Below, piece after piece: positions 10,877 to 59,313 of a DNA stretch of 64,000 bases. Location of the stretch: IMG/VR virus record IMGVR_UViG_3300028920_000001, positions 248,001 through 312,000 of that record; one strand, written 5' to 3'. The translations under genes were made by a program, and so were the position numbers. A model generated the notes under the pieces. That model searched no databases and was not told the DNA's origin. It saw only the letters and a list, made by a program, of their open reading frames with translations. How positions within the stretch are numbered: the stretch's first letter is position 1; each line of letters begins with the position of its first letter.

Positions 10877-12265
10877 ATGAAACGCGTAAAAGTTATTATT
10901 CCGACGAACCAGTCATTTTTAAGAGACTGGTATTCGTGGACCCATGGCCGTGTGTCTCGTCACTTCAAGCGGAACAAGGAACGGGTAATTGATACCGCAC
11001 AGAACGTGCGGTTACGTCTCCTCAGCAAAGATTTCATCGGCAGGTGGTTTTTTAAACATCTGACTGAGGACTTAATCACTCGAGAACAAGCTGAGAAAAT
11101 TCTCGGTGGTATTCGAATTGCGTTTGCTGGTTCTATCCATCCGGTGGTGGGTGATCGGTCTGATCCGGAGTCTTTATGGCGCGTATCAGATATTTTGCAG
11201 TTTGCTAAATTTGATTACGATCGTTATTATTACTCAATTCAAAATCACACGATCGATAGTGATCGGATGATCCGCCTACTCGGTTATCCGGAAAAGTCGT
11301 ATGGCTTGTTACAATCATTGTATCGCCAAGGTCGAATTCGTCCTGCTGAATTTACTGAGCATGATTGCACAGGGAAAAAAGATTGTGTATCATGTGATCG
11401 AGGCCGAGCTCGTTTGCGTGGTAAAGGGATTTCTTTAGCTCATAACTGGCTAGATCCGAAAGTTGAATGTCACGTCAGCGCTTTACGTTGGAATGATTCT
11501 CAATTATCCCCATTTTTGCGTAATTGGAAGCGGATGAACTGGATCAAGTGTACTCCCGATTTCATCATGCGTCCTGAAGGCAAAAAGACGGCAACTATTA
11601 CTGCTGGCCTACTCAAGTATGCAGCTATTATTATTGATAATGAAGTTGTCAATGATTTTAAGCGGATGGGTCGCGTTGATGATTTGTCGAACGTGATTCT
11701 GAATAATGGTATGTCTCCTGAGCTTTCTAATAATGAAACTGTTGCTTATGAAGTAGATGAAAAAACTGAGGAAACAAAAGCTGTTCTATGTGATCCTCAG
11801 GCCAATGAGACTTTTGAAGAGTCTGATCGCCGTAGTGATATTACTGCACTGATCAATAGCTCAAATTTGACTGATGAGGAGTATGAAGTCATTTTGAGAA
11901 TTGATCTGCAAAATATGTCGGTTCGTGCTTTTAGTGAGGAGTATGAAATTCAGATTCAGAAAATTCACCGAATTCGAAATTCTGCACTTCGTAAAATGCG
12001 GGGGTCGAAATTAGATGAAGAGGGGATTAAGAATCTGGTCAGATCAATTTGTTTGGGTCATTCAATGACAATTGAGCAAATTTTGTCTCCGGAGCCGTTT
12101 GGCCCGTCGGTCGTTGCTCGGACTGATTTGTTTTCTACTCTTTACGATCATGGAATGAATATTGAGGCTATTTCTGGCTATTTCTTATACCCTCAACCTA
12201 AAATTGTGGCAGCCATTAATCGTAAATGTAATCAGGAAATGCGGGTTCGTAAGCCGAAGGGCTAG
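10877..12265 (+). CDS. Sigma-70/ECF-like factor with large region-2 insertion and C-terminal DnaA-domain-IV-like HTH
   Basis: GGAGG SD before ATG 10877; region-2-like segments (VIDTAQNVRLRLL; LLKYAAIIIDNEVVNDFKR); region 4 LTDEEYEVILRIDLQNMSVRAFSEEYEIQIQKIHRIRNSALRKMR. Confidence 0.65.
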   Translation: MKRVKVIIPTNQSFLRDWYSWTHGRVSRHFKRNKERVIDTAQNVRLRLLSKDFIGRWFFKHLTEDLITREQAEKILGGIRIAFAGSIHPVVGDRSDPESLWRVSDILQFAKFDYDRYYYSIQNHTIDSDRMIRLLGYPEKSYGLLQSLYRQGRIRPAEFTEHDCTGKKDCVSCDRGRARLRGKGISLAHNWLDPKVECHVSALRWNDSQLSPFLRNWKRMNWIKCTPDFIMRPEGKKTATITAGLLKYAAIIIDNEVVNDFKRMGRVDDLSNVILNNGMSPELSNNETVAYEVDEKTEETKAVLCDPQANETFEESDRRSDITALINSSNLTDEEYEVILRIDLQNMSVRAFSEEYEIQIQKIHRIRNSALRKMRGSKLDEEGIKNLVRSICLGHSMTIEQILSPEPFGPSVVARTDLFSTLYDHGMNIEAISGYFLYPQPKIVAAINRKCNQEMRVRKPKG

Positions 12266-12280: not shown

Positions 12281-13711
12281 GTGGTCATGATGGCCACTCA
12301 AGTACACCTTGCCTCTTCAACTCGTTTGATCCTGGCTATGTTTCAACTTATAGCTGCGATTGAAGATAATTTCGGTAGGGCCTTATTTGATATTTTATCT
12401 AAGCAATATCCGGATCAAGTTGATGATATGGTAGCCAAGTTGTCCGGTTTTCCCGCAGAACAAATTGAAGCGGAGCCGGCAACTGCTAAAAGGGCTGCTT
12501 TTCGTCGACTTGGAAATCGGATGTTAGCAATAGCCCGTCGTGAGCTTCAGCATTCGCCAGATGAGGCGATTGATGTTGTTCAAGATTTTCTTACTTATAT
12601 TGCAACTGGATCAAAGACAGTTGAGGATCCTGAAACTGGTGAAAGGACTGAACGAACTGAAGCGGAGCCATGGGATTTTACCAAGGCTGATGAAAATTGG
12701 CAGGGAGCTTTAAAAAAGATTTTCCGTAATATTAAAACTACTGGGATTAGCCGATCTCAAAAGATTACTGGGATTCGTGATTCTGATAAACGTGAATTTG
12801 GAATGCTGAAATGGAAGATGGAACAAGGTGAAGAACTTGACGCACGTGAGAAGGCTGAATATAAGAAATTAGAGAAACTATTTAAGTCTAAGAAAGTTGA
12901 TCCTGATTCAATTCCGGCGTGGGATCCTGATAAGCCTTGGGGAGCTAAGGAAAAGGGGATTGAAGAAGCCTTCGGTAAGCGTGGTGAAGAAGGTGAAGAA
13001 AAGTCTGGTGGTGAAGGAGCCATTCCGACCACTGATGAAACTGCACTTGGTAAAGCTCTCGATGACAAAGCCGCTGTTCGTGAATTTATCGATTTAATTG
13101 ATCTTCATCTCCCGGATCTTAAGTCATCATTATCTGAAGATACCAGTAAGTTATTTGATTTAATTTTTGAAGATGAAATTGGTTCATTTGGTTCTGACAT
13201 TAAAGAAAATATGGGTCAAGCTTCAGCTCTTAAAGAAAAATATCCGGAACTTTATGAAGCTAATAAGAAGCGCTGGTCTGGATTTGTTGGTGATTTGCGT
13301 AAAAAGTTATTGAAAGAAATTTTCAAATATATAGATACTGAGATGTCGAAGCGTGATTATGAGCGCCTATATGAAGAATTTTTCGCGGACACGACTCCTC
13401 GAGATGTCGAAAAGAGGGAAGAGGCTAAAGTTAAAGAGAAAGAATCCTATCAACGTGGGATTGATGAACGCAAATTAGGTCGTCTTAAGTACAAAAAGGA
13501 TCAGAGTGGTAAGCTTTCCGATCGAGAGCAAAAAGAATGGGATCGTTTGGTTAAGAAACTTAATTTGTCTGAAGAAGAAATTGGAAGAATTGAAGCTGTT
13601 TCGCCTAAATCGAAGAAAGGTCCTGCAGCTGAAGCCATGGCATCTCTTAGCCCAATGGCTCGTAGATTAGCCATTAATTGGTTAATTGACCATGGATGGT
13701 TCACTATATAA
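12281..13711 (+). CDS. Divergent sigma-factor-like protein, possibly virion-associated
   Basis: RMLAIARRELQHSPDEAIDVVQDFLTYI resembles ECF region 2; LSEDTSKLFDLIF...DLRKKLLKEI is region-4-like. Confidence 0.5.
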   Translation: MVMMATQVHLASSTRLILAMFQLIAAIEDNFGRALFDILSKQYPDQVDDMVAKLSGFPAEQIEAEPATAKRAAFRRLGNRMLAIARRELQHSPDEAIDVVQDFLTYIATGSKTVEDPETGERTERTEAEPWDFTKADENWQGALKKIFRNIKTTGISRSQKITGIRDSDKREFGMLKWKMEQGEELDAREKAEYKKLEKLFKSKKVDPDSIPAWDPDKPWGAKEKGIEEAFGKRGEEGEEKSGGEGAIPTTDETALGKALDDKAAVREFIDLIDLHLPDLKSSLSEDTSKLFDLIFEDEIGSFGSDIKENMGQASALKEKYPELYEANKKRWSGFVGDLRKKLLKEIFKYIDTEMSKRDYERLYEEFFADTTPRDVEKREEAKVKEKESYQRGIDERKLGRLKYKKDQSGKLSDREQKEWDRLVKKLNLSEEEIGRIEAVSPKSKKGPAAEAMASLSPMARRLAINWLIDHGWFTI

Positions 13712-14045
13712 TAAATTCACTGGCGAGCGTCCTAACAGACGACTTCGGCTAGTTTCATATGAGTATGCTTGTACTAAGATTCCTCGTTTGGTTTTATTAT
13801 TATTGAGGCAAGAGCAACTAAGAATCACTACCGGGAGTCATCGGGAAGGTTATGATGTAGTTACTATTTATCGGCTTACTCATCCGGAAGATTATTGGGT
13901 ATTGCTTCGGGAAGATTTTGAAAGAGTCAAAAATATAGCGTCAAATTCTACTCTTAGAATATTTGGATCCGAAACTGATCAAGATATTAAGAATCGTATT
14001 TTAGCGCTTGTAAAAGTAGAGTTTTCAGATAGGAAGGTTTTCTAG
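13686..14045 (+). CDS. Hypothetical protein
   Basis: 119-aa ORF in the operon. Confidence 0.55.
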   Translation: MTMDGSLYNKFTGERPNRRLRLVSYEYACTKIPRLVLLLLRQEQLRITTGSHREGYDVVTIYRLTHPEDYWVLLREDFERVKNIASNSTLRIFGSETDQDIKNRILALVKVEFSDRKVF

Positions 14046-14052: not shown

Positions 14053-14253
14053 ATGACTAAGAAGAAGGATCCGGGACCAATCGTTTTAGTTCCGTGTAAG
14101 CGTGGAAGAGATCAAAAGACTGCCGGGACCAGTTGTTCTAGTAAAAAAGCATATAAATTAAGTGAAGACGGGGCTAAGCTTGTGAGGTTTAAGTGCGTTG
14201 AATGTGGACACACTTGGACTATTCCGGTTGGTGGCCAATTCACTGCTGTTTGA
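14053..14253 (+). CDS. Zinc-ribbon protein
   Basis: C..C..FKCVECGHTW. Confidence 0.65.
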   Translation: MTKKKDPGPIVLVPCKRGRDQKTAGTSCSSKKAYKLSEDGAKLVRFKCVECGHTWTIPVGGQFTAV

Positions 14254-14440
14254 TATTAGACACCGTTGGCAGTTGAAGATCGAAAATTCTCCGGCTCACG
14301 GAGGGGATAACCTGTATCAATGTCAAAATTGTGAATATAATATTTTCGCCAAGTCTCCAATGGAAGCTCAATGGCTTTCGGATAAATATGGTCACCCTTA
14401 TTGTAATTATCGCATTATATACAATATAATGGAGTCGTAG
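14198..14440 (+). CDS. Small His/Cys protein ending IYNIMES (start uncertain)
   Basis: HRW..CQNC..C plus the shared C-terminal motif. Confidence 0.5.
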   Translation: MNVDTLGLFRLVANSLLFDIRHRWQLKIENSPAHGGDNLYQCQNCEYNIFAKSPMEAQWLSDKYGHPYCNYRIIYNIMES

Positions 14441-15270: not shown

Positions 15271-16197
15271 TTGGCTAATTTAGTTATCATAAACGGGGAT
15301 GATGAATTCCTCAAAGAACGTGCTGCTTTAGATGAAGCGCATAATTTTTTAACGAATGATATAGACTGGTTTGATTATTCCAATCTTGATCGTTATCTAG
15401 ATGAATCTCAAATGGTTCCGTTGTCGGGGGAAGGTCGAATATTTATCATCCGAAATTCGAAAAAAGTACCAGAACTCCCATGTGGTGAAAATGATGTACT
15501 CATTCTAATATCGCATTCTCAGCTTACCGATGGTAGAGCTAAACGAATACATAGTATAAAGGCGCTGAAAACTTTCGATAATAACAATGAAATCATTAAA
15601 TGGATTTTAGTTGAGGGTAGACGATCTAATATCGATTTATCTAGAGTCGCTGGTGCTTTATATATCAATAATGGAAAACGCTTAAGGAAAATTCATTCTG
15701 AAATCCAAAAATTAATAGCATTAACTGAACCCGGTGATATTGTTTCTCCTGAAGTTGCTAGATCAGTGTTATGTTTTTCTGCTGATCTCACACCTAAACA
15801 AGTAGTGGATGCAATGATTGATGGTAATGCTAGATTAGCACTAGGTTATTACGATAAGCTACAAGAAAAAGCGGATGAGACTGGATGGATCATATCATAT
15901 ATGCAATTTCATGTGCTTCAACAACTAAGAATGGAAGAATTACATCGGAAAGGAGTGGAACATAACGATTCGGCAGCTAAACTTAGTGTTCACCCGTTTG
16001 TATACAAAAAGATGTTAGAAAAACGTTTGGGACTGTGGACTTCAGAGTCTTTATTAAACAGTGTTTCTGCGCTCTGTGATCTCGATCTCGAACATAAGCG
16101 TGGCAACAAAGCAGCTCGATTAGGGTTGGAAGCAGAAATTATTAGACTGTCTGAGGAGTCAGGGAATGTCCAAAGAGTCAGTGGCACGAAAAACTGA
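15271..16197 (+). CDS. holA: Clamp-loader delta-like subunit
   Basis: IINGDDEFL, IHSEIQKL, LSVHPFVYKK, LCDLDLEHKRG..RLGLE. Confidence 0.8.
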   Translation: MANLVIINGDDEFLKERAALDEAHNFLTNDIDWFDYSNLDRYLDESQMVPLSGEGRIFIIRNSKKVPELPCGENDVLILISHSQLTDGRAKRIHSIKALKTFDNNNEIIKWILVEGRRSNIDLSRVAGALYINNGKRLRKIHSEIQKLIALTEPGDIVSPEVARSVLCFSADLTPKQVVDAMIDGNARLALGYYDKLQEKADETGWIISYMQFHVLQQLRMEELHRKGVEHNDSAAKLSVHPFVYKKMLEKRLGLWTSESLLNSVSALCDLDLEHKRGNKAARLGLEAEIIRLSEESGNVQRVSGTKN

Positions 16198-18955
16198 TAT
16201 CGAATCTCCTGGTGTCGCGACCTTAGAAAAAGTAGTGGGGATGCCGAAAGCCGGCAAAGAAGCTGGTACTTGGGAGCGTGTTTTTACTGTAGAAGGTGTA
16301 CATCCATTTGATGAAATAGAATGGAAGACAATAAATGCTAAAATCGTAGCTGAAAATGGTGAAATTAAATACGAGCAAAAAGATGTTGAATTTCCAATTT
16401 GGTGGCATCAGACCAATATTAATGTAGTAGCTAGTAAATATTTTCGTATTATTGATGGAGTTAAAGAAAATTCACTTAAACAAATTATAACTCGAGTAGC
16501 TAACGTTATTACGGATTGGGCTACTGAGCAAGAATACTTTAACACAGAGAATGACGCTAATATTTACAAGCAAGAATTAATTTATGCTTTGGTTCATCAA
16601 TATGGAGCTTTCAATTCTCCAGTATGGTTTAACTTAGGAGTACCTGGTCGTCGTCAAACAGCTAGTGCTTGTTTTATTCAAGGAATTTATGACTCATTAG
16701 ACTCAATACAGACTTTTCAACGTTCTGAACTTAGTATTTTTGCTAGTGGTTCTGGATCAGGTGCTAATTTTAGTGATCTTCGTTCTTCATATGAGAAGCT
16801 TTCATCTGGTGCATATGTGTCTGGTCCAATTGCATGGATGCGTCCTTTAGATCAGGCAGCTGGTGCTATGAAGTCAGGAGGATCCACCCGAAATGCGGCT
16901 AAAATGGTCGTTATGGATATGGATCATCCTGATATCATGGAAACGTTAGACGGTCGTCCAGGTTTCATTCGATGCAAGGCCGTTGAAGAGCAGCGAGCTC
17001 ATGACCTAATTGAGATGGGATATGGAACAGCTTATGATGATCCAAATTCTGCGTACAAGAATGTGATGTATCAGAATGCGAATCATTCGGTGAGTGTGCC
17101 TGATAATTTTATGAAGTCTGTTGAGTCCGATGGACAATGGGAGACTAAAGAACGATTAACTAATGAAACGGTTCATACTTATAAAGCTCGTGATTTATGG
17201 GATGAAATTGCTAAAGCAGCTTGGAAATGTGGAGACCCTGGAGTTCAATTTACTGATACTATCAATAACTGGCATACTACGCCGAAATCTGGGAAAATTC
17301 GTTCGAGTAATCCATGTAGTGAATTCTTACATGTTGACAATACGGCATGTAATTTATGTGGTCTAAATCTTAGCAAGTTTTTTCTTAATGGAGCTCCACT
17401 CGATGTTAAAGCTTTTGAACATGCAGTTCGTATTTTCGTGACTGCACAAAATGCTTTTGTGAATAAGGCTGAATATCCTACACCTGAGATTACTAAGAAC
17501 TCCCATATGCTGAGGCCAATTGGTCTTAATTATGGTGATTTGGGCGCCGTTATCATGAAGCTTGGGTACGCCTATGATTCAGATGAAGGACGTGCAGTAG
17601 CAGCACGTTTAGCTAGTTTGATGACAGGCTATGCTTATCTGTATTCATCTAAATTGGCCGCCCGTACTCAGGTATTTCCTGAGTATGAACGTAATAAGCA
17701 AGATATGTTGCGAGTCATGCGCATGCATCAGAAAGCTGATGCTGACATTTTGAATCGTTGGAACTTATCAGAAGATCCATTATCTGTTAGTGATAAATCA
17801 CAATCAGTTTGGGAACGAGTTAATGCTATTGGCGAGCGTCACGGATTCGCTAATTCTCAGACTACACTTCAAGCTCCGCTTGGCACGATTTCATTTCTCA
17901 TGGGAATGGATACTACCGGTATTGAACCAGCATTTTCGTTGGTATCATATAAATCACTTGTCGGTGGTGGCTTTGAAAAATTAGTTAATCACGCGGTAGA
18001 ACAAGCACTGCTGATGCTTGAGTATTCTGATGATCAAATCACGGAAATTAGGGATTATATTAATCAAAATGATTATATAGAAAAAGCTCCACATCTAAAA
18101 GAAGATCATTTATCAGTATTTGATTGTGCAGCTAACACAGGTCCATCAAAACGTCACATTTCAGCGATGGGTCATCTTAAGATGATGGCTGCCATTCAGC
18201 CACTCATTACCTGTGCTATGAGTAAGACAGTTAATTTACCAGAAGAAACAACTCCGGAGCAAATTGCTGAAACGTATATGGATAGTTGGAAGCTCGGTCT
18301 CAAGTGTGTGGCTCTTTATCGCAATGGGTCAAAGAAATCACAACCTTTGTCGAGTAAAAAAAATAATTTCAAAGAAGAAAGACCTTCAGGAATTCAAGAA
18401 GTAATTAAAGAGATTATTAAAGAGGTCCCTGCACCACGTCGAAAGCTGCCGGAGAATATCTCTGCTAAGCGGCATAAGTTTGTGATTGATGGTTCTAAGG
18501 GTTATTTAATTATGGGTGAATATGAGGATGGAACCTTAGGTGAAATCTTCATCCGATTCGGTAAGAACGGTTCTACGTTAAATGGTCTTATGGATGCGAA
18601 TACGCAATTAGCTAGTATTGCATTACAGCATGGTGTTCCACTTGAGAAGTTGATTCGTGCATTTATTAATACTAAGTTTGAGCCGGCTGGGTTTACTCAG
18701 AATCCCGACATCAGGTTTGCTACAAGTTTACTTGATTATGTTTTCAAATATCTTGATATCAGATACTGTGGTGGTCGAGTTTCAGGTTTAGATGCTCGTC
18801 TCTCCGATCAAGATCATGATATTTCTCATCCGAGTTCTGATCGTCCTAGTATGACGCCAGATGCTCCACCTTGTGTTCATTGCGGTTCTATTACTCGCCG
18901 GAATGGTTCTTGCTATTTATGTGAGACTTGTGGTAACACTTCGGGTTGTAGTTGA
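16166..18955 (+). CDS. nrdJ: Class II (B12-dependent) ribonucleotide reductase with C-terminal TSCPD/Zn domain
   Basis: FNSPVWFN, SACFI, TRNAAKM, SNPCSE, APLGTIS, SKTVNLP, CETCGNTSGCS. Confidence 0.95.
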   Translation: MSKESVARKTDIESPGVATLEKVVGMPKAGKEAGTWERVFTVEGVHPFDEIEWKTINAKIVAENGEIKYEQKDVEFPIWWHQTNINVVASKYFRIIDGVKENSLKQIITRVANVITDWATEQEYFNTENDANIYKQELIYALVHQYGAFNSPVWFNLGVPGRRQTASACFIQGIYDSLDSIQTFQRSELSIFASGSGSGANFSDLRSSYEKLSSGAYVSGPIAWMRPLDQAAGAMKSGGSTRNAAKMVVMDMDHPDIMETLDGRPGFIRCKAVEEQRAHDLIEMGYGTAYDDPNSAYKNVMYQNANHSVSVPDNFMKSVESDGQWETKERLTNETVHTYKARDLWDEIAKAAWKCGDPGVQFTDTINNWHTTPKSGKIRSSNPCSEFLHVDNTACNLCGLNLSKFFLNGAPLDVKAFEHAVRIFVTAQNAFVNKAEYPTPEITKNSHMLRPIGLNYGDLGAVIMKLGYAYDSDEGRAVAARLASLMTGYAYLYSSKLAARTQVFPEYERNKQDMLRVMRMHQKADADILNRWNLSEDPLSVSDKSQSVWERVNAIGERHGFANSQTTLQAPLGTISFLMGMDTTGIEPAFSLVSYKSLVGGGFEKLVNHAVEQALLMLEYSDDQITEIRDYINQNDYIEKAPHLKEDHLSVFDCAANTGPSKRHISAMGHLKMMAAIQPLITCAMSKTVNLPEETTPEQIAETYMDSWKLGLKCVALYRNGSKKSQPLSSKKNNFKEERPSGIQEVIKEIIKEVPAPRRKLPENISAKRHKFVIDGSKGYLIMGEYEDGTLGEIFIRFGKNGSTLNGLMDANTQLASIALQHGVPLEKLIRAFINTKFEPAGFTQNPDIRFATSLLDYVFKYLDIRYCGGRVSGLDARLSDQDHDISHPSSDRPSMTPDAPPCVHCGSITRRNGSCYLCETCGNTSGCS

Positions 18956-34245: not shown

Positions 34246-34366
34246 TAAAGTATTTATGGTTGCTTATGCAACCTCGGTCGATATCATACCTAATATAAAA
34301 CAGACCTCGATATTATAATGATACCTACACAACCACGACACATATTGTGTCCGACCGAGGTTGCCA
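34246..34366 (+). promoter_or_regulatory. Structured 5' leader with SD-occluding stem
   Basis: -10 TAAAGT at 34246; perfect 13-bp inverted repeat 34268-34280 / 34352-34364 covers the GAGG SD. Confidence 0.6.
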
Positions 34367-35146
34367 ATGACGTCTTCTCATGTTTTGATCCAAGATCCGA
34401 ATGATATTTCTGCACGATATAGTAATGATGATAGATTAGGTTTTGATGGGGAAGATGATTTTGATGATTTTGATGGTTTAGATGAACATATTGAAGATCA
34501 GTTAGCTCCAGCAATCCCTGATGAAGTTTCTACTAAGAAATTAGCTTTTGAGGCGATTGAGCGATTTTTATACAGGATTCCGCCTCGAGAAGCGGATTTA
34601 ATTACTTTATATTATAAGAATCATTTAAAGCAAGAACAAATAGCTAAATTATTCAATATTACTCAGGCTGCAGTTTCCTATCGTCTTCATCGTGGAATTA
34701 AGAGAATTCAATTCCTTCGAACAATTCCTGAATTAGAGCGTGATACTTTTGAGCTCGAGCTCGGACCTAAGTTTTCTGATCAAGATCGGGAAATTTTGTG
34801 GCGGATGTATAAAACGACATGTCAGTCTGCAATAGCTAAGCAGATGGGACTAACCCAAGGTCGCGTTCGTCATCGTTTCTTTAGGTCATTGAGTCGAATT
34901 AAGGAATTGATTGCTGATGAAGCCAAAGAAACTCAGATTGGTCTTAGAATGGAACAAAGAAAGGGAGTTAACATTACAGATGAAGAGATTCAAATAGAGG
35001 TGAATGAAACTATTAATAATTGTAAATATTCTAAATATTGGACTGTTTTTTTTGCAATTTCAGACAAATACTTCAATATCTTACATGAAGTTAGCCTACC
35101 GCAATTTCAAAATAGGGGCGACGCTCAGATTTTATCGGGTGGATAG
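34367..35146 (+). CDS. Regulator with tandem sigma-70 region-4 HTHs
   Basis: IPPREADLITLYY..LKQEQIAKLFNITQAAVSYRLHRG and FSDQDREIL..QSAIAKQMGLTQGRVRHRFFR; no region 2. Confidence 0.75.
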   Translation: MTSSHVLIQDPNDISARYSNDDRLGFDGEDDFDDFDGLDEHIEDQLAPAIPDEVSTKKLAFEAIERFLYRIPPREADLITLYYKNHLKQEQIAKLFNITQAAVSYRLHRGIKRIQFLRTIPELERDTFELELGPKFSDQDREILWRMYKTTCQSAIAKQMGLTQGRVRHRFFRSLSRIKELIADEAKETQIGLRMEQRKGVNITDEEIQIEVNETINNCKYSKYWTVFFAISDKYFNILHEVSLPQFQNRGDAQILSGG

Positions 35147-37787: not shown

Positions 37788-38060
37788 ATGAGTAAATTTA
37801 ATATCGAGGATCTTCGGTTTTCTTCCAGTTCAATTGATGATTTTTTCAAGAGTCCTGAACCCAGGGTTCATACTTCTTCGACGGTTGGGAAGGTCCGGGT
37901 TTCAGGACTTCATGAATTAGCCGGATTTAGTTTTATAGCTGAAGATAAACTGGTTAGGACTAGTAAACAAGACTTTTGGCAATTAGGTCAAGATGATGAT
38001 GGGTATTTCATCGAACGTTTGGTCAGTGACGATGATGGGCCGATCAAGGAAGAAGAATAA
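37788..38060 (+). CDS. Head-cluster hypothetical protein
   Basis: GGAGG SD; 90 aa. Confidence 0.7.
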   Translation: MSKFNIEDLRFSSSSIDDFFKSPEPRVHTSSTVGKVRVSGLHELAGFSFIAEDKLVRTSKQDFWQLGQDDDGYFIERLVSDDDGPIKEEE

Positions 38061-39184
38061 TGGACCTAGATAAGATTGCCCGTCGGATTAGTTCTTCTGG
38101 TCGCATTCGTACGGCTGGACGAATTGAATTCGTCCGTGATCAAGGTCCTCTTCGTCGTGATTTGCGTGCCAAGGGGTTTTCATTTAGCTCCGATACCTTA
38201 AAGGATTTAGCTAAAGTATTATGGGCTGCTGAACGAGCTCATAGTTATGGAATGGCTGCTCTAAGATTATTTTCTAAGACCCCTGCCTCTGAGATCAGTC
38301 CTGATGGATTATTGGGTGGCCGTGGGTATATTCAGCAAATTAAAGAGATGCGTTCTAATCTTTCTCAAGCTGTTGAAGTTCTATCTGCATTTTCAGATAC
38401 TATGCATGATGAAGTAAATGCAGATCATTGGGCTGGTGCTAGTGAATCAGAACCTGAAATTGAAGAGATTGTAGAACAAGCTGATGCTGTGAAAGCTGCC
38501 CCCGAGCAGTACGTTGAGGAGCAATTTGAACAGCAAGTTCCGGAAGCATCTGAAGATTTTAATCAGTTAACAAATCCTTCTCCGGAAGAAATGAATCCGG
38601 TAGTAGAAAATTCTGGCCCTCCGGATTGGGATTGGGGTCAAGAAGAGACTCAGATTCAGTCTTCGGAGAAAGCAATCCACCGCCCAAAAGATCCAAAGGA
38701 CTCTGATTTAAGAGTCCTGAAGGGCCAAATATCGAGCTCATCAATTCCAGTAGAGACTTTGCCTGGTCCCAGAGTGAAGCATATTGGGCCGGGTGAGGGT
38801 GATCAGGAATTCGGATATTATGCCGATGATGATGAGCGGCCAAGTGATGATCCTATCGGAGAAGGATTTCGTTTTCTAGAAGAAGTATATCAGGATTGGG
38901 ACATTGGAAAGGGTGGGGTGACTGGTTATGATAATCCCACCGATGGTGATACATCAAAATTTAAGCAATCTGCTCTTAAATTGGCAAATTATTCATGGCT
39001 TCCTGGTTCTCGAAATGAAAAATTAATGCCATACTATGATCCTAATGCTACTGATGAAGATGTTGAATGGATGAGAGCTCATGATCAGCCTGAGCCTCCG
39101 AAAAGCTTAGCGCCTCCTCCTGAAAATATGTTGCCTGATAAATTATGGGAGGCTCGACGTAATGCCGACATCTCTTCCGACTGA
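38060..39184 (+). CDS. Acidic putative internal head protein with MDLDKIARRISS leader
   Basis: Shared N-terminal motif; TAATG coupling. Confidence 0.65.
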   Translation: MDLDKIARRISSSGRIRTAGRIEFVRDQGPLRRDLRAKGFSFSSDTLKDLAKVLWAAERAHSYGMAALRLFSKTPASEISPDGLLGGRGYIQQIKEMRSNLSQAVEVLSAFSDTMHDEVNADHWAGASESEPEIEEIVEQADAVKAAPEQYVEEQFEQQVPEASEDFNQLTNPSPEEMNPVVENSGPPDWDWGQEETQIQSSEKAIHRPKDPKDSDLRVLKGQISSSSIPVETLPGPRVKHIGPGEGDQEFGYYADDDERPSDDPIGEGFRFLEEVYQDWDIGKGGVTGYDNPTDGDTSKFKQSALKLANYSWLPGSRNEKLMPYYDPNATDEDVEWMRAHDQPEPPKSLAPPPENMLPDKLWEARRNADISSD

Positions 39185-42247: not shown

Positions 42248-42853
42248 ATGGATGATGGCCCTACCGATGATCAGGATAAGGGTAACGGCGACGGCAAAGG
42301 GAAATTAATAACTTTCCCTGGTGGTAAGAAAGTTGACCCTGAAGAAGTTGGCCTGGATAGTATAGTAGGCCAAACTGGGGATATTCCTACTCCAGATATT
42401 TTAGATCCAGTGTACTTAGATAAAGAATTGCGGGAGCGAGTTGAATATGTAAAGAAACAGGCTCTAGTTCAGGCTATCACTGAAAAAAAGAGTACTATTG
42501 ACACTATCGATGCTGTTTTGGTTGAAATAGCGGAAGAATTAGCTCATCTTAAATTTGAAAGAAGAAAAGCTGCTAAAGAAGGTAAAAATACTGCGAGCTA
42601 TACCATTGGTAGAATAGGTTCTCTGACTAAATTAGCTGATTTATTATTGAAGAAGAAAGAATCTATGATGCAAGAGGAACTGGACCTGAAATCGTCCAGA
42701 TTCCAGGCAGTTTTTAGAGTTTGGATGGAATTTTTCCATGATTCGATGGAAAAATCTGGTATTTCTCCAGAAGTAATTGATGTTATATTTCAACAGATGA
42801 AAGCTGATATGGTTGATTGGGAAAGAAAAATGTCTACTGCCGGTATTGAATAA
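42248..42853 (+). CDS. Candidate terminase small subunit
   Basis: Helical 201-aa protein coupled (TAATG) to terL; positional inference only. Confidence 0.4.
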   Translation: MDDGPTDDQDKGNGDGKGKLITFPGGKKVDPEEVGLDSIVGQTGDIPTPDILDPVYLDKELRERVEYVKKQALVQAITEKKSTIDTIDAVLVEIAEELAHLKFERRKAAKEGKNTASYTIGRIGSLTKLADLLLKKKESMMQEELDLKSSRFQAVFRVWMEFFHDSMEKSGISPEVIDVIFQQMKADMVDWERKMSTAGIE

Positions 42854-44799
42854 TGCCTAGTATTGAGAAACAAGAAAAAAGTAAATTAACTGGACTTGTT
42901 GACGATTTTCTAATTAAAAGAAAGAAAATTAGTTCTGGAAATGATAGTGATGATAGTACTACATTTCTTACTATTATTGATTTTATCGAACGATTTAAAT
43001 TACTTCCATATGGTTTATTTCCAGTTCAAAAGTTCATATTGAAATTATATTATAATATTCCATTAGATGATAAGTTACCTGGAGACGAGCGGGATAGAAT
43101 CTATGTAACTCCGAATTTTAGATCCAATAAACGGGTCTATATGACGGAAGTTAAATACCTCGAATATTTATATAGTCAAGGTCGCTGCAATATAAAAGAG
43201 CAGGGTGATATTCGATATGAATTAATTTTAGTATTGGGACGACGAAGTGGGAAAAGTGCACTAGCTTCTTTAATCGCAGCTTATGAACTTTATAAATTAT
43301 TAGCTCGTGATTGTCCTCAGAAATTCTATGGGATGCCAGTTTCCAGTGAAATTCGAGTATTAGATGTTGCAAATGACAAAGACCAAGCTGAGATTGTTTA
43401 CCAAGATATTGCTGGATACGTAGAAAGTGTTGATTATTTTAGAACGTCGTTGGCTAATCATACGACACAATTTATGAAATTCAAAACTCCCCATGATAAA
43501 AGAAAATTTGGTGACGAAGGGCGCTCAACATTAACAGCTACATTCAAGAGCTCAATTGCTAAAGGTCTTCGTGGTCGTGGTGTTATTTGTTTTATTCTGG
43601 ATGAATTTGCATTCTTCTTAAATGAAAGCGGTAAGTCTAATGCGCGTGAAGTTTACCGAGCTATTACTCCATCGCTTAAGCAATTTACTCCAAAAGATTC
43701 TAAAGACAAACGAAAAGCTATCGCAAAATCTGAAGGTAGAACTGTTGTTATTTCTTCCCCTGATGCAAAAGATGGATTCTTTTATCATCTTTACCAACTT
43801 TCTTTGACTAAGGATGTTGCTGCGTCGAATATGCTAATGATTCAGGCTCCGACGTGGGAAGTTAATCCTACATTGAGCCAGCAAGATTATGAAATTGAAT
43901 ATGCTAAAGATCCTCGGGCATTTATTACCGAGTATGGAGCTCAATTTTCTGATCGAGTTCGTGGTTGGATAGAAGATGCGAAGGACTTACAAGATTGCAT
44001 TATTGATGATTTAAAGCCATTGGTACGTGGTAATCCTCGAGAGCCCTTCTGGGCCGGGTTGGACTTCGGAATTTCGAAGGATGGTACTGCTGTTGCTCTA
44101 ACTCATTTGTTGAATGGAAGGATTACTCTTGGTTATCATGAAGCTTGGTATGCTGGAAAAAACTGGAAAGAGACTAATCCTCATCTTACTAATCCCTTAG
44201 TTCCGTATGCGCGAACTCTTCAAGACGTTAAACGACTCGATATTGATGAGATAGCTAACTGGTTATTTGTCTTATCTAAACGATTTTATATTTTGAAAGG
44301 AGTATTTGACCAATGGGCCGGTCCAGTATTTGAACAAAAATTACATAAAACTGGACTTCAGCAATTTGAAATGCGTCATTTCAGTACTGCCGATAGTTCT
44401 AAAGTATACCAAAACGCCAAGATGTTCATGTACACCACTCAGTTGGCATTTTATGATTATCCGATTCCTAAGCAAGTTATTCAGGAAGATGGCCTAGTTC
44501 TACACTCTCCTTTAATTGCTGAAATGTTAGAACTTCAAGCTACTTCAGCGGGGAAAAATTTAATCTCTGTAGAGGCTCCAAACATTCCAGGAAAGCATGA
44601 TGATAATTCCGATGCTGTGATGAGAAGTATTTATCTAGCTGCTGAGTATATTTCTGAAAATCCTGGAATTTTGGATATTAGTCATATTGAAGTAATGCCG
44701 ATGGCTCGCAAAAATTATGGTTATCGGCATTTCCATCGGGCTCGAACCAGGCTCCATGGCCCTCCTCCGCCTGAAAGGCGTGTCTTTAGGCGGGGATAA
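42853..44799 (+). CDS. terL: Terminase large subunit
   Basis: Walker A GRRSGKS, Walker B FILDEFAFF, ISSP, nuclease GLDFG..D, FDQW, HDDNSDA. Confidence 0.92.
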   Translation: MPSIEKQEKSKLTGLVDDFLIKRKKISSGNDSDDSTTFLTIIDFIERFKLLPYGLFPVQKFILKLYYNIPLDDKLPGDERDRIYVTPNFRSNKRVYMTEVKYLEYLYSQGRCNIKEQGDIRYELILVLGRRSGKSALASLIAAYELYKLLARDCPQKFYGMPVSSEIRVLDVANDKDQAEIVYQDIAGYVESVDYFRTSLANHTTQFMKFKTPHDKRKFGDEGRSTLTATFKSSIAKGLRGRGVICFILDEFAFFLNESGKSNAREVYRAITPSLKQFTPKDSKDKRKAIAKSEGRTVVISSPDAKDGFFYHLYQLSLTKDVAASNMLMIQAPTWEVNPTLSQQDYEIEYAKDPRAFITEYGAQFSDRVRGWIEDAKDLQDCIIDDLKPLVRGNPREPFWAGLDFGISKDGTAVALTHLLNGRITLGYHEAWYAGKNWKETNPHLTNPLVPYARTLQDVKRLDIDEIANWLFVLSKRFYILKGVFDQWAGPVFEQKLHKTGLQQFEMRHFSTADSSKVYQNAKMFMYTTQLAFYDYPIPKQVIQEDGLVLHSPLIAEMLELQATSAGKNLISVEAPNIPGKHDDNSDAVMRSIYLAAEYISENPGILDISHIEVMPMARKNYGYRHFHRARTRLHGPPPPERRVFRRG

Positions 44800-44824: not shown

Positions 44825-45088
44825 ATGCCCACGAAAGCCGGTATTACTAATACTGCTGCCTATCGAGTTATTAGGGAAGTTATGGATCATGTGTTTGATC
44901 CGGATACTGAACTTGAAGAAGATGATGTAATTGGGATCTGTGATATTTTTAGGGATTTGAATGGATCTTGGGAGTCGGTCATGAGTGGGGATATGGATGA
45001 ATATCAGAAATTGGAGAATGCTATTGAATCTAGATTAAGTCTAAATCAAATGGCCAGACAGCTCGCCTCACAGTCTTTTAAAAGGTAA
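44825..45088 (+). CDS. Hypothetical protein; C-terminal LNQMARQLAS
   Basis: 87-aa ORF. Confidence 0.65.
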   Translation: MPTKAGITNTAAYRVIREVMDHVFDPDTELEEDDVIGICDIFRDLNGSWESVMSGDMDEYQKLENAIESRLSLNQMARQLASQSFKR

Positions 45089-45495: not shown

Positions 45496-47319
45496 ATGGC
45501 AGCTAAGAAGAACGGGAATGGACGAGTTAGAACCGGTCAAATTCCGGTTCAGCACGTTAATATCCAGAAGGTTCCTTCCAAAAAGCTAACTAAATTAGAA
45601 AGGCAAGCCCGGAGAGAAGCTGCTCAATCTATTCGTGTGGCTGCTACCTGTGGTCCAATTGGTGGATCTGGATTAGGAAGCGGGGGTTTTGGTGGTTATG
45701 GGAATGCCGATATTGGATTAGCTAATTCCAATTTTTACAGTCCTCAGTTATCAACTGACTTTTTAGAGTTACCTCAATCTGAGCGTGAAAAACGCGAGTT
45801 ATTTAGATTTTGGTATACAACTCATCCAATCGTTGGGGCATCAATTGATTTTCATACTGATGTCCCGATGTCAAAAATTCGGTTGTCTCTGCCGAAGGGG
45901 AAAGATCACAAAAGAAATAAGCAGATCTTGCATTACTATCAAGAAATGTGCAGGCGACTGCGGCTTTTCCAAGTTCTCTACGATGCCACTCATGAATATT
46001 GGTTACATGGAAATGTGTTTATTTTCTGTGAAGACCAAGATATGGCACCAGAACTTCCTGATTCTATCTTCGTGAAAGAAGTGGAAGAAGAAATTGGTGA
46101 AGTTGATGCATTAGGAAACCCGACGGTTCGTAAAGAAAAGAAACAAGTAGAGAAATCTGAAAAAGAAAGAATGGATGCCATTCACGAATATGTGGCTGAT
46201 AAATATCAGGGATGGCAGCGTCTTCAAATTTTGCCGCCAGAGCAAGTTAAACTAGAAGTTTTTCAGTATACTAATAAAGTTAATATGGAACTTATCCCGA
46301 GCGAAAAAGATCGTTTGGTGGTATTGAGAGCTGAAGATCAAGGGGATCCGGAAGCTAGAAGAATTGCTGATGATATTCCAGAACAAATTAAAGAGAATTT
46401 ACTTAACGGTCAGCCTATTCCATTAAATACTAGTCCTTACGAAGATTATATTTGTTCTTCGTTTTGTTATCATTTATCGCACAAAAAATCATCTTATGAT
46501 GATCGTGGAATTTCAATTTTAGAGCGTTGTCTTCGTACTCTTCTCTATCAAGATAAACTTCGTCAAGCCCAGACTTCGATTGCCTCCCGTGCAATGACAC
46601 CAAAGCGCATTGTGTGGGCAGACAAAATGTCTCAAACAGATGTGGAAGATCTGCGAGATCAGGTTGATCAAGCTCTGATTGATCCGGATTTCACTATTAT
46701 TACTAATTTTGAGCTTCATTGGGATGAGATTGGAGCTCGAGATCGTCTTTTAGATTTAGGTACTGAATACGAGATTACAAATAAATTATTGTTTATCGGC
46801 CTTCGAATTACTGAGGCTATGTTAACAGGAGAAAGTACCTATTCCGGGGAGCGTATTCATCTGGACGTGATGAATACAATGTATTTGCTTTACCGTGAGA
46901 CAATAGCGGAATTCGTTGAGGAGCAGATTTTTGCACCGGTAGCCGAAAAGAAAGGTTTTTGGGAAATTGATGAATATGGGAATCGGGTTCTTCTTTATCC
47001 GAAGCTTCAGTTTACCCGACTGGCTCTTCGAGATAATGCTGAACTTCAGGATTTCATGTTTAATTTATATCAAAAAGGCTCATTGCCTATTTCATATATT
47101 TATGAACTTTTGAACATTGATGTTGATGACGCCCATTCGGAACTTCAGAAGGATGTATTTACTCTGAAGGATTCTCAGATGAATGAATTGGTCAGGAACC
47201 TTCTAGGTGCGGCCGGGGAAAAGCTTTTGGATGAGACCGATGTGATTGATAAGATAGTAAAAAGTCTTGGTCTTAAACATGAAAAGAAAGAAGGAGATCG
47301 TTTTGGTAAGGAAGAATAA
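45496..47319 (+). CDS. Portal protein
   Basis: Position after terL; HPIVGASIDFH, EYWLHGNVF, RGISILERC, LTGESTYS; 607 aa. Confidence 0.8.
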   Translation: MAAKKNGNGRVRTGQIPVQHVNIQKVPSKKLTKLERQARREAAQSIRVAATCGPIGGSGLGSGGFGGYGNADIGLANSNFYSPQLSTDFLELPQSEREKRELFRFWYTTHPIVGASIDFHTDVPMSKIRLSLPKGKDHKRNKQILHYYQEMCRRLRLFQVLYDATHEYWLHGNVFIFCEDQDMAPELPDSIFVKEVEEEIGEVDALGNPTVRKEKKQVEKSEKERMDAIHEYVADKYQGWQRLQILPPEQVKLEVFQYTNKVNMELIPSEKDRLVVLRAEDQGDPEARRIADDIPEQIKENLLNGQPIPLNTSPYEDYICSSFCYHLSHKKSSYDDRGISILERCLRTLLYQDKLRQAQTSIASRAMTPKRIVWADKMSQTDVEDLRDQVDQALIDPDFTIITNFELHWDEIGARDRLLDLGTEYEITNKLLFIGLRITEAMLTGESTYSGERIHLDVMNTMYLLYRETIAEFVEEQIFAPVAEKKGFWEIDEYGNRVLLYPKLQFTRLALRDNAELQDFMFNLYQKGSLPISYIYELLNIDVDDAHSELQKDVFTLKDSQMNELVRNLLGAAGEKLLDETDVIDKIVKSLGLKHEKKEGDRFGKEE

Positions 47320-58302: not shown

Positions 58303-58619
58303 TGAATCTCTCCAAGATTGCCTCGAGAATCGCTGCGGCTAATACTGCATACCGAGTTATTACTGATGAGCCGGTAGGCATTACTATCGGATTTGAACCT
58401 AAAGGTTTTGAATATGATGAATTTCAAATTCAATCTGATGATGGTGGAGATAATGTTTATATTCAAGAAGATGGAGAAACTTTAATCATTTCTAAGGACC
58501 CTAATCTTAATGGTGAATTTCCTGAACCTGATTTATTAATCTGGCGCACTCCAGATGAATTTAAGAGTTGGATTGCAGAGATGGATGAAGAGGAAGAGAT
58601 GGATGAAAAGGAAGAATAA
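58302..58619 (+). CDS. Leader-array protein 2 (MNLSKIASRIAA)
   Basis: TGATG coupling; acidic. Confidence 0.75.
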   Translation: MNLSKIASRIAAANTAYRVITDEPVGITIGFEPKGFEYDEFQIQSDDGGDNVYIQEDGETLIISKDPNLNGEFPEPDLLIWRTPDEFKSWIAEMDEEEEMDEKEE

Positions 58620-59305: not shown

Positions 59306-59313
59306 TTGGAGGA

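What the first reader, a model, noticed from the sequence alone, without database searches (positions are those of the whole stretch)
12281..13711. Second sigma-like protein with head-protein motifs: possible injected sigma factor
Seen: ECF-like region 2, a degenerate region 4, a duplicated charged segment (DKREFGMLKWK..GEELDAREKAEY / DERKLGRLKYK..GKLSDREQKEW), N-terminal VHLASS and C-terminal LSPMARRLA, which resembles the leader. Inference: it could be packaged, trimmed and delivered to redirect host RNAP at infection.
Basis: inference. Interest (0 to 1): 0.62.

Follow-up and report, generated by a model that had tools for sequence, protein, structure and literature searches.

The report
Hidden phage sigma factor with leader tail
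This gene of a 427-kb uncultivated marine-sediment phage encodes a protein that no sequence search recognises but that folds like a bacterial sigma factor. It ends in the same short peptide that starts about twenty other proteins of this phage, so it may share their destination, possibly the capsid.

Summary
The ORF is real: 12281..13711 on the + strand, with ATG 12287 the likelier start. It belongs to a conserved, unannotated family (at least 168 relatives) on 180-430 kb phage contigs. Pfam, PHROGs, PDB sequence search and profile-profile comparison all fail to call it a sigma factor.

An AlphaFold2 model (pLDDT 77.6) gives sigma factors as the top structural matches. A sigma2-like domain covers aa ~25-163 and a sigma4-like domain aa ~259-357, in the canonical order.

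A controlled complex prediction places helix 93-109 (near-invariant D98 and Q101) on the E. coli beta' clamp helices. The score was 0.69 against 0.00 for the best control.

The "duplicated charged segment" is real. It is a lineage-specific copy of the family's C-terminal helical hairpin.

The C-terminal "LSPMARRLA" is the phage's leader peptide, [IV]A[AS]R[VI]A[AS]. That peptide sits at or near the N-terminus of about 20 otherwise unrelated ORFs, most of them clustered around the head genes. Of 120 family members, 39 carry it in their tail; 0.44 would be expected by chance. The N-terminal "VHLASS" is not leader-like.

Verdict: a strongly divergent sigma70-type factor for host RNA polymerase. 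Packaging and injection are plausible by analogy with phage T4 capsid-targeting sequences, but untested. There is no evidence for trimming.

The parts
12287..13711 (+). Gene of the sigma-like protein. The ORF opens at GTG 12281; ATG 12287 is the likelier start. Residue numbers below count from 12281.
   Evidence: (identical 474-aa record)
12353..12769 (+). Sigma2-like helical domain, aa ~25-163. Family-invariant residues include G78, Y106, F133, A143, N150 and S159.
   Evidence: AF2 pLDDT 84-96. VIA rows: SigK sigma2 at 35-162 (Z 5.7), and whole-chain ECF SigL, SigH and SigB (Z 5.5-6.8). Invariant columns.
12557..12607 (+). Helix aa 93-109 (AIDVVQDFLTYI), the equivalent of sigma region 2.2 and the predicted beta' clamp-helix contact. 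D98 and Q101 are nearly invariant.
   Evidence: tightest predicted pairs involve residues 97-109, most of them Q101
12437..12505 (+). Lineage-specific insertion 1, aa 53-75, present only in this protein and its closest relative.
12776..12928 (+). Lineage-specific insertion 2, aa 166-216.
12944..13045 (+). Conserved Gly/acidic linker predicted to be disordered, aa 222-255. Family consensus AFGxRxEGGGxPEGGExRMPTxxETxLGKALDD. It lies where the sigma2-sigma4 linker (region 3.2) lies.
   Evidence: pLDDT about 40; conservation; in-register but non-significant hhalign to sigma region 3.2/4.1
13055..13351 (+). Sigma4-like helix-turn-helix domain, aa 259-357. R331, W332, G334, V336 and R340 are invariant in the putative recognition helix.
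   Evidence: VIA rows: SigR r4 (Z 5.6, rmsd 2.3, 64/65 aligned), sigmaE r4 (69/69), SigL r4, CnrH, SigW, SigD4, WhiG
13391..13567 (+). Family-wide charged helical hairpin, aa 371-429.
   Evidence: Only generic coiled-coil matches.
13646..13708 (+). C-terminal tail after a disordered linker. It holds the leader-type peptide LSPMARRLAIN (aa 456-466) followed by W467, W473 and F474.
10877..12265 (+). Upstream partner gene, always adjacent. A second sigma-like protein (462 aa) with a Zn-ribbon insert and a C-terminal domain with the DnaA domain IV fold.
14053..14253 (+). TFIIS-type zinc-ribbon protein (66 aa) two genes downstream, conserved in the syntenic loci.
   Evidence: PF01096, E 1.6e-4, 21.9 bits against a cut-off of 21
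58299..60591 (+). Array of six small ORFs just downstream of the major head protein. Each starts with the leader M(M)[ND][FL]x[KR]IASR[IV]AA and continues with unrelated sequence.
47348..49582 (+). 744-aa protein just downstream of the portal gene. It carries the leader peptide at aa 66-76 and a Lys/Gly-rich repeat tail.
38060..39184 (+). 374-aa ORF upstream of the terminase gene, with an N-terminal leader (MDLDKIARRISSS).

Best explanation
The gene encodes a strongly diverged two-domain (ECF-like) member of the sigma70 superfamily. It is conserved in a clade of uncultivated 180-430 kb phages.

Proposed mechanism. These phages have no Pfam-detectable RNA polymerase of their own, so the protein is proposed to bind host core RNA polymerase. 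Its region-2.2-like helix (aa 93-109, D98/Q101) would dock on the beta' clamp helices. The conserved aromatic stretch PWDF..TW..AL..SN (aa 129-150) would serve as the -10/melting module. The conserved Gly/acidic linker would play the part of region 3.2. The sigma4-like domain (aa 259-357, invariant RWSGFVGDLR helix) would read a -35-like element.

It would work as one of several phage sigma factors, together with the adjacent sigma-like gene and a TFIIS-type zinc-ribbon protein, at the head of the replication and nucleotide-metabolism operon.

Two additions are specific. The first is a charged helical hairpin, duplicated in this lineage. The second is a flexible C-terminal tail ending in the phage's leader peptide. 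That tail most likely docks the protein on the same partner that receives about 20 leader-bearing proteins.

What is shown and what is inferred. Shown in silico: the fold, the predicted beta' interface, the identity of tail and leader, and the synteny. Inferred: promoter-specific initiation, the roles assigned to the aromatic stretch, linker and sigma4 helix, and what the tail binds.
For: Family and synteny:
- At least 168 homologues at 36-86% identity, none annotated, on contigs up to 428 kb.
- Gene order is the same in all 17 loci examined: sigma-like 1, this gene, a ~115-aa ORF, two Zn-ribbon ORFs, pol III delta', delta, RNR.

Fold:
- AF2 pLDDT 77.6, with both domains at 84-96.
- Foldseek PDB: the top 23 rows, and 33 of the top 34, are sigma chains of RNAP holoenzymes, at weak E-values of 0.07-0.6.
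- VIA-align against 48,161 chains: 16 of the first 22 rows are sigma factors. They cover sigma2 (35-162), sigma4 (259-361, with whole sigma4 domains aligned at rmsd 2.3-3.3) and whole ECF sigmas in order (Z 5.5-6.8).
- The best viral match is a phage sigma factor.
- The nearest Pfam-bearing protein-language-model cluster carries Sigma70_r2.

Interface:
- Complex prediction with RPOC_ECOLI 230-340 gave ipSAE 0.68/0.71/0.69; the best of 3 controls was 0.00.
- That mark was reached by 58 of 80 solved complexes and 2 of 110 mismatched pairs.
- The runs agree in at least 54% of contacts, and partner pLDDT is at least 74.
- The interface is beta' 271-301 against aa 23-38 and 94-112. This is the canonical sigma region 2.2/clamp-helix contact (established knowledge).

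Context:
- No Rpb1/Rpb2-type polymerase was found in the complete 426,960-bp genome.
- Canonical sigma genes also occur elsewhere in the genome.
- The neighbour gene matches sigma region 4 by hhalign (80%, E 1.3e-5).
- A TFIIS-type Zn ribbon lies two genes downstream.
Against: - No sequence method sees a sigma factor. Pfam and PHROGs found nothing in 40 members. A PDB profile search found nothing. hhalign against sigma70 and against the neighbour family was non-significant.
- Structural scores are modest for helical proteins: Z<8, Foldseek E>0.05, TM 0.1-0.2 for whole chains.
- The complex model used E. coli beta', not the unknown host's. The tool warns that a pass can come from memory of solved sigma-core complexes, so it shows likeness rather than binding.
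- No promoter motif was found.
- No expression data exist.
Confidence: 0.68

Rival explanations
1. Injected sigma factor. The C-terminal leader peptide is a capsid-targeting signal. The sigma-like protein is loaded into the procapsid, travels in the virion and enters the cell with the DNA to capture host RNAP at once. This adds to the sigma explanation rather than excluding it.
For: - The tail peptide is statistically the same as the leader: 14.2 bits here, and 39/120 family tails reach 10 bits against 0.44 expected.
- Leaders head about 20 otherwise unrelated ORFs (22 hits against 1.45 in shuffles). Thirteen lie within 286-321 kb, around the head module at 290-305 kb.
- These include a six-gene array right after the major head protein and a 744-aa Lys-rich protein right after the portal.
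- The motif can also be C-terminal in other head-module ORFs (window 44825..45088, 10.9 bits; a 95-aa ORF in G008).
- Leader and major capsid protein (86-91% identity) are both unusually conserved across phages whose sigma-like proteins are 32-62% identical.
Against: - There is no evidence that the leader targets the capsid. Leader-bearing proteins have no recognisable domains.
- The gene sits with early/middle-type replication genes, not late genes.
- The tail is eroded or absent in a large part of the family (41 of 117 'none'). One example is a phage (G009) that still has 19 leader hits. The tail is therefore dispensable for the protein's core job.
- No processing site could be defined.
- I found no precedent for a packaged sigma factor.
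- No virion proteome exists, because the phage is uncultivated.
Confidence: 0.25
2. The tail is a tether to a non-capsid hub. One model is the replisome or sliding clamp, as with the C-terminal clamp-binding tails of T4 gp55 and gp33. Another is an autoinhibitory or turnover element that also regulates the small leader-bearing proteins.
For: - The architecture (folded sigma, disordered linker, short terminal peptide) and the position next to the clamp-loader genes delta' and delta recall T4 late transcription (established knowledge).
- The peptide works at either terminus, as short docking motifs do.
Against: - The motif [IV]A[AS]R[VI]A[AS] does not resemble the bacterial clamp-binding consensus QL[SD]LF (own knowledge).
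- No replication protein of the genome carries it at 12 bits or more.
- Its other carriers cluster at the head module.
Confidence: 0.12
3. It is not a sigma factor. It is a helical DNA-binding or structural protein whose helix-turn-helix domain and helical bundle only resemble sigma4 and sigma2, for example a replication-origin or nucleoid-associated factor of the replication operon.
For: - Every sequence-based test for sigma membership failed.
- Z 5-7 is within the range that unrelated helical proteins can reach, per the tool note.
- A designed helical repeat protein scores Z 5.9 on aa 25-162.
- The neighbour carries a domain with the DnaA domain IV fold.
Against: - Sigma factors dominate two independent structure searches for two separate domains in the right order.
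- The predicted beta' contact uses the near-invariant D98/Q101 helix, with controls at 0.00.
Confidence: 0.18

Closest known systems
ECF (group 4) sigma70-family factors, e.g. M. tuberculosis SigL/SigH/SigK and E. coli sigmaE
   Same: Two-domain sigma2-linker-sigma4 architecture. These are the best structural matches. The region-2.2-like helix is predicted on the beta' clamp helices. The sequence pattern D-x-x-Q-D-F-L..W..N..R resembles ECF region 2.
   Different: - No HMM-detectable similarity.
- 375-476 aa instead of about 180-220.
- Beta-hairpin and other insertions inside sigma2.
- A conserved Gly/acidic 30-aa linker.
- An insertion inside the sigma4 helix-turn-helix.
- An extra C-terminal charged hairpin and a terminal docking peptide.
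T4 late-transcription factors gp55 (sigma2-like) and gp33 with sliding clamp gp45
   Same: A phage-encoded, extremely divergent sigma. A short C-terminal tail tethers it to another phage protein. There is a genomic and functional link to the clamp/clamp-loader system (established knowledge; Iyer et al., PMC7824862, for jumbo phages).
   Different: gp55 lacks sigma4, whereas here both domains sit in one chain. The tail motif is unrelated. The other carriers of the motif are head-module ORFs, not replication proteins.
T4 internal proteins (IPI-III, Alt) with the capsid-targeting sequence
   Same: A short conserved terminal peptide on otherwise unrelated, fast-evolving small proteins arranged in arrays. 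In T4 it directs encapsidation and injection (PMC3012670).
   Different: The T4 signal is N-terminal and is removed by the prohead protease. Here the sigma-like protein carries the peptide at the C-terminus. Neither cleavage nor encapsidation is shown. The peptide sequences are unrelated.
C-terminal cargo signals of HK97-fold shells (HK97 prohead protease C-terminus, encapsulin cargo-loading peptides)
   Same: A short peptide after a flexible linker, at either terminus, that docks cargo on the inner face of an HK97-fold shell (own knowledge). This phage has an HK97-type major head protein.
   Different: No sequence resemblance. The binding partner here is unknown.
Virion-packaged RNA polymerases (N4 vRNAP, phiKZ-like virion RNAP)
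   Same: Transcription machinery delivered with the genome, if the novel reading holds (PMC7598289).
   Different: Those are whole polymerases independent of the host enzyme. Here it would be only a specificity subunit for the host core.

Membership tests
sigma70 superfamily (ECF-like two-domain sigma) | Significant match to the Sigma70_r2 / Sigma70_r4 sequence models | tested here: not met
   No sigma family at E<=1 in this protein or in 39 homologues. hhalign against a 25-sequence sigma70 alignment gave 0.1-1.3% probability. A PDB profile search found nothing.
sigma70 superfamily (ECF-like two-domain sigma) | Sigma2 helical-domain fold at the N-terminal side | tested here: inconclusive
   SigK sigma2 aligned to aa 35-162 (Z 5.7, rmsd 3.7, 79 aa). 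Whole-chain rows to ECF SigL, SigH, SigB and sigma32 (Z 5.3-6.8). A designed helical repeat scores the same, and Z<8 is not decisive for helical proteins.
sigma70 superfamily (ECF-like two-domain sigma) | Region 2.2 helix that binds the beta' clamp helices (coiled coil 260-309 of E. coli beta') | tested here: met
   In silico only. ipSAE 0.69 against 0.00 for the best of 3 controls. The interface is beta' 271-301 against aa 94-112 and 23-38. The mark was reached by 58/80 solved complexes and 2/110 mismatched pairs.
sigma70 superfamily (ECF-like two-domain sigma) | Sigma4 helix-turn-helix domain C-terminal to sigma2 | tested here: met
   Full-length sigma4 domains of SigR (64/65 aa, rmsd 2.3), sigmaE (69/69, rmsd 2.7), SigD (68/68), SigL, SigW, CnrH and WhiG align to aa 259-361 (Z 5.5-6.1).
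sigma70 superfamily (ECF-like two-domain sigma) | Promoter-specific initiation with core RNAP | not testable with these tools
   Needs biochemistry. A 9-mer enrichment scan of intergenic DNA found no promoter candidate.
T4-type capsid-targeted (internal/injected) proteins | Short conserved terminal peptide shared with otherwise unrelated phage proteins | tested here: met
   22 genome hits at 12 bits or more against 1.45 in shuffles. This tail scores 14.2 bits. 39/120 family tails reach 10 bits against 0.44 expected.
T4-type capsid-targeted (internal/injected) proteins | Signal at the N-terminus and removed by the prohead protease | tested here: not met
   In this protein the peptide is C-terminal, and the N-terminus is not leader-like (2/120). 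Cleavage cannot be tested here.
T4-type capsid-targeted (internal/injected) proteins | Presence in procapsids or virions and delivery into the cell | not testable with these tools
   Uncultivated phage from a marine sediment metagenome. No proteome and no RNA runs.
T4 gp55/gp33-type clamp-tethered transcription factors | C-terminal sliding-clamp-binding motif | not tested
   The motif does not look like the bacterial clamp-binding consensus (own knowledge).

The most novel reading that the evidence does not exclude
A sigma factor that carries a capsid-targeting peptide, is loaded into the phage head with about 20 other leader-tagged proteins, and is injected with the DNA. The very first transcription on the incoming 427-kb genome would then use host core RNAP already reprogrammed by a virion-borne specificity subunit. 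I know of no precedent for such a delivered sigma factor.
Probability: 0.22. Interest if true: 0.85.

Novelty: new variant of a known kind. Interest (0 to 1): 0.62.

Why it matters
- Hidden transcription factors. A whole clade of huge environmental phages carries a core transcription factor that every sequence-based annotation pipeline labels "hypothetical". Recognising it, and its sigma-like neighbour, shows that these phages run a multi-sigma programme on the host polymerase.
- A new sorting signal. The shared 7-residue peptide defines a previously undescribed sorting or docking signal used by about 20 proteins per genome and conserved across the clade. Finding its receptor would explain a large block of dark-matter genes.
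- A new takeover strategy, if the receptor is the procapsid. That would add a third strategy beside injected RNA polymerases and injected RNAP-modifying enzymes: an injected sigma factor.
- A possible tool. The same peptide would be a handle for loading cargo into large capsids.

Tried and rejected
- Sequence routes that gave nothing for this protein:
  - Pfam and PHROGs, and Pfam on all 40 aligned members.
  - tblastn and megablast against 50,697 phage records.
  - Profile search of PDB sequences.
  - hhalign against a sigma70 alignment, whole and by domain, and against the neighbour family. The alignments were in register with regions 2.1-2.3 and 3.2/4.1 but not significant.
- ESM Atlas shape search: TM 0.19-0.23 only, uninformative.
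- Leader-bearing proteins: Pfam and PHROGs gave no usable domain. Two had sub-threshold APH-kinase-like matches.
- Promoter search: 9-mer enrichment in intergenic DNA found only tRNA T-loop words.
- Expression: no RNA run holds the locus.
- N-terminal 'VHLASS' as a leader: rejected.
- Tail loss as a single event: rejected. Tail, weak and none forms are interleaved on the tree, needing at least 17 changes, though the labels are clustered.
- The large representative protein search was not run, because the word search had already given at least 168 relatives.
- No alternative genetic code was needed.
Full report
**1. What is there**

The window lies at 248,001-312,000 of a complete virus record. 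The record is 426,960 bp long, has direct terminal repeats and is estimated 100% complete. Its DNA is held by a marine sediment metagenome, and no RNA run holds it.

The ORF 12281..13711 (+, 476 aa from GTG) is real. An identical database record starts at ATG 12287 (474 aa). There is no strong Shine-Dalgarno sequence in front of it. The upstream gene has a clear one (GGGAGGAAAG) before ATG 10877.

**2. Family and context**

Pfam, PHROGs, the phage nucleotide and protein collection and a PDB sequence-profile search give nothing.

The word-indexed protein search finds at least 168 relatives. They share 36-86% identity, are 360-570 aa long, are all unnamed, carry no Pfam domain, and sit on contigs up to 428 kb.

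The gene order is the same in the 17 loci examined:
- adenylosuccinate synthase on the opposite strand;
- two small ORFs;
- a 460-557 aa protein (here 10877..12265);
- this gene;
- a ~115-aa ORF;
- two zinc-ribbon ORFs;
- pol III delta' and delta;
- ribonucleotide reductase;
- ligase.

The first zinc ribbon (14053..14253) passes the Pfam cut-off for the TFIIS-type ribbon.

The upstream protein is itself sigma-like:
- hhalign to sigma70 region 4 gives 80% probability, E 1.3e-5.
- Its AF2 model (pLDDT 81.8) matches sigma4 domains at Z 7-8.7.
- It adds a C-terminal domain with the DnaA domain IV fold (Z 10.4).

The genome has no Rpb1/Rpb2-type polymerase detectable by Pfam. It does have three further sigma-related genes:
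- a canonical 396-aa RpoD-like sigma;
- a 219-aa region-2 protein;
- a protein with two region-4 domains (window 34361..35146).

**3. Is it a sigma factor?**

*Sequence says no.* None of 40 members touches a sigma model at E<=1. Profile-profile comparison with a 25-member sigma70 alignment gives about 1% probability. The alignments it proposes are in register, though:
- sigma 2.1-2.3 falls on G-x-K-M-M-x-I-A-R-K .. A-x-D-x-I-Q-D-F-L-T-Y .. P-W-D-F .. T-W-x-D-A-L;
- sigma 3.2/4.1 falls on E-T-x-L-G-K-A-L-D-D .. S-L-S-x-D-x-R-x-L-F-D-L-I-F-E-D.

*Structure says yes, moderately.* The AF2 model built on 40 homologues has mean pLDDT 77.6, with both folded domains at 84-96.
- Foldseek against the PDB: the top 23 rows, and 33 of the top 34, are sigma chains of RNAP holoenzymes, at E 0.07-0.6.
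- The Foldseek-independent aligner was run against 48,161 chains.
  - ECF SigL (Z 6.8) and SigB (Z 6.3) come first.
  - 16 of the first 22 rows are sigma factors.
  - Whole sigma4 domains align to aa 259-361: SigR 64/65 residues at rmsd 2.3, sigmaE 69/69, SigD 68/68.
  - SigK sigma2 aligns to aa 35-162.
- The best match among predicted viral structures is a Vibrio phage sigma factor (E 0.064).
- The nearest Pfam-bearing language-model cluster carries Sigma70_r2 (score 0.90, a lead only).

*The predicted interface is the strongest single test.* I folded aa 1-166 with E. coli beta' 230-340.
- The score (ipSAE) was 0.69 (runs 0.68, 0.71, 0.69). The best of three controls was 0.00.
- This mark was reached by 58 of 80 solved complexes and 2 of 110 mismatched pairs.
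- The runs agree in at least 54% of contacts, and partner pLDDT is at least 74.
- The interface is beta' 271-301 against aa 94-112 and 23-38. beta' 271-301 is the clamp-helix coiled coil, which includes positions 275 and 295 known to matter for sigma70 binding (own knowledge).
- The tightest pairs centre on Q101. D98 and Q101 are nearly invariant in the family and are spaced like D403/Q406 of sigma70 region 2.2.
- The tool's caveat applies. Such a pass shows likeness to solved sigma-core complexes, not that this copy binds. The true host's beta' is also unknown.

I conclude it is a sigma70-superfamily protein diverged beyond HMM reach (confidence about 0.7).

**4. Anatomy beyond sigma2 and sigma4**

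- A beta-hairpin and a variable insertion lie inside sigma2, at aa 110-128.
- A predicted-disordered but conserved Gly/acidic linker (AFG-R-EGGG-PEGGE-RMPT) sits where region 3.2 would be.
- There is an insertion within the sigma4 helix-turn-helix.
- The putative recognition helix is invariant: K-R-W-S-G-F-V-G-D-L-R-K-K-L.
- A family-wide charged helical hairpin covers aa 371-429.
- A disordered linker follows, and then a short terminal helix at aa 458-470.

The first copy (aa 166-216) is an insertion found only in this protein and its two nearest relatives. A further insertion (aa 53-75) is found only in this protein and its nearest relative.

**5. The leader**

A regular-expression scan, followed by a scoring matrix built from ten N-terminal sequences, shows that this genome uses a peptide M(M)[ND][FL]x[KR]-I-A-[SA]-R-[IV]-A-A. 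The peptide sits at or near the N-terminus of about 20 otherwise unrelated ORFs. There are 22 hits at 12 bits or more, against 1.45 in shuffled proteomes.

Thirteen of them lie within 286-321 kb, around the head module. That module comprises:
- terminase, 42853..44799;
- portal, 45496..47319;
- an intein-bearing prohead protease, 51465..54224;
- the major head protein, 56457..57350.

The nearby leader carriers include a six-gene array directly after the major head protein (58299..60591). They also include a 744-aa protein with a Lys/Gly-rich repeat tail directly after the portal.

The same matrix was built without any member of the sigma-like family. It scores the C-terminal tail of this protein at 14.2 bits, the only C-terminal hit in the genome at that threshold. 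Across the family:

| Region scanned | Members at 10 bits or more |
|---|---|
| Last 45 residues | 39/120 |
| Same tails, shuffled | 0.44 expected |
| ~330-aa middle parts | 0/120 |
| N-termini | 2/120 |

The core [IV]-A-[AS]-R-[VI]-A-[AS] is the same in leaders and tails. In the tails an aromatic residue usually follows, close to the C-terminus (44/49).

On a tree built without the last 50 residues, tail-bearing members occur on both sides of the midpoint root, interleaved with eroded forms. The counts are 49 tail, 27 weak and 41 none. The labels are clustered (0 of 500 shuffles as low), but at least 17 changes are needed. The tail is therefore probably ancestral and often lost.

Leaders are also abundant in related phages. 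G009 has 19 hits against 1.0 expected, and G008 has 9 against 0.6. G009's sigma-like protein has no tail motif.

The major head protein is 86-91% identical across these phages, while the sigma-like protein is 32-62% identical.

**6. What the tail means**

The pattern is many unrelated, fast-evolving small proteins in arrays near head genes, sharing only a short terminal peptide. This is the pattern of T4 internal proteins, whose capsid-targeting sequence directs them into the scaffolding core and hence into the host (PMC3012670).

It is more than I expected to be able to say for it.

It remains an inference, for these reasons:
- Nothing identifies the receptor of the peptide.
- Leader-bearing proteins have no recognisable domains.
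- The sigma-like gene lies with replication genes rather than late genes.
- The peptide is at the other terminus.
- The tail is dispensable in many lineages.
- No cleavage site can be defined.
- No virion proteome exists.

I put this reading at about 0.2-0.25. Alternatives are a tether to another hub, as with the clamp-binding tails of T4 gp55 and gp33, or a regulatory element. "Trimmed" has no support, and the N-terminal "VHLASS" is not a leader.

**7. Comparison and novelty**

The protein works like an ECF-type sigma factor, but it fails the family's sequence-model test. It meets the fold and predicted core-binding tests in silico.

The literature I could search describes sigma factors in jumbo phages that lack their own polymerase (PMC7824862). 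It does not describe this family, the leader peptide or any packaged sigma.

I rate it a new variant of a known kind. It comes with an attached and genuinely new observation, the clade-wide leader peptide shared with a sigma factor, which could lead to something categorically new.

**8. Limits**

- Every functional statement is computational.
- E. coli beta' stood in for an unknown host.
- Structural Z-scores are modest.
- The costly representative search and read laying were not used. There was no RNA run to lay.

Noticed in passing
window 10877..12265 (+): The upstream neighbour is a second divergent sigma-like protein (462 aa). It has a sigma2-like N-terminal part with a CxxC..CxxC zinc-ribbon insertion and a sigma4 domain (hhalign against sigma70 80%, E 1.3e-5; VIA Z 7-8.7). 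It also has an extra C-terminal domain with the DnaA domain IV fold (Z 10.4, rmsd 2.1 over 77 aa). A sigma fused to a DnaA-box-type DNA-binding domain is unusual.
   Followed up: partly
window 58299..60591; also 38060..39184, 47348..49582 (aa 66), 57757..58302 (aa 67, probably its own GTG start), 63412.., 63828..; genome 85988, 106369, 107417, 240183 (two copies), 244753, 317243, 319190, 320364: A clade-wide leader peptide, M(M)[ND][FL]x[KR]IA[SA]R[IV]AA, sits at or near the N-terminus of about 20 otherwise unrelated ORFs. Many of them are small, acidic and arranged in arrays next to the head genes. It resembles T4 capsid-targeting-sequence arrays in organisation but not in sequence. Its function is unknown.
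   Followed up: partly
window 51465..54224 (+): The 919-aa head-maturation protease homologue is interrupted by an intein: Hint plus a LAGLIDADG homing endonuclease (Pfam PF14528 E 2.6e-12, Intein_splicing, Hom_end_hint).
   Followed up: no
window 47348..49582 (+): The 744-aa protein right after the portal has a very basic N-terminus, the leader peptide at aa 66-76 and a C-terminal KGKGKAQP / FGGKKAPP repeat tract. It is a candidate DNA-associated internal head protein.
   Followed up: no
window 14053..14253 (+) and 14198..14440 (+): Two small zinc-ribbon ORFs lie downstream of the sigma pair and are conserved in all syntenic loci. The first passes the Pfam cut-off for the TFIIS-type ribbon (21.9 bits against 21). 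Together with the ~115-aa ORF 13686..14045 they may form a transcription module.
   Followed up: partly
window 56457..57350 (+) and related phages G001-G010: The major head protein (297 aa, phrog_2522 E 1e-43) is 86-91% identical across phages of very different G+C content, whose sigma-like proteins share only 32-62% identity. This is unusually strong capsid conservation. The region 54-58 kb also has G+C 0.51, against 0.34-0.44 elsewhere in the window.
   Followed up: partly
window 34361..35146 (+); genome 65.9-66.6 kb (-) and 44.1-44.8 kb (+): Further sigma-related genes are present. One is a 261-aa protein with two Sigma70 region-4 domains (E 2.6e-14). Another is a canonical 396-aa RpoD-like sigma. 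A third is a 219-aa protein with region 2 only (E 2.3e-8). With the two divergent ones, the phage has at least five sigma-type genes.
   Followed up: partly
window 44825..45088 (+): An 87-aa ORF between terminase and portal ends in LSLNQMARQLASQSFKR. This is a weaker (10.9-bit) C-terminal copy of the leader-type peptide. A 95-aa ORF of related phage G008 has a 14.5-bit C-terminal copy.
   Followed up: no
loci L013, L016, L019 compared with window 16166..18955: The ribonucleotide reductase is 929 aa here but 1338-1366 aa in three related phages. That suggests an intein or another large insertion in those copies.
   Followed up: no
related phage G009 (L058:15627-16955): Two adjacent leader-bearing proteins (223 and 218 aa) have sub-threshold matches to the APH phosphotransferase/kinase family (E about 1e-3, below the cut-off).
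   Followed up: no
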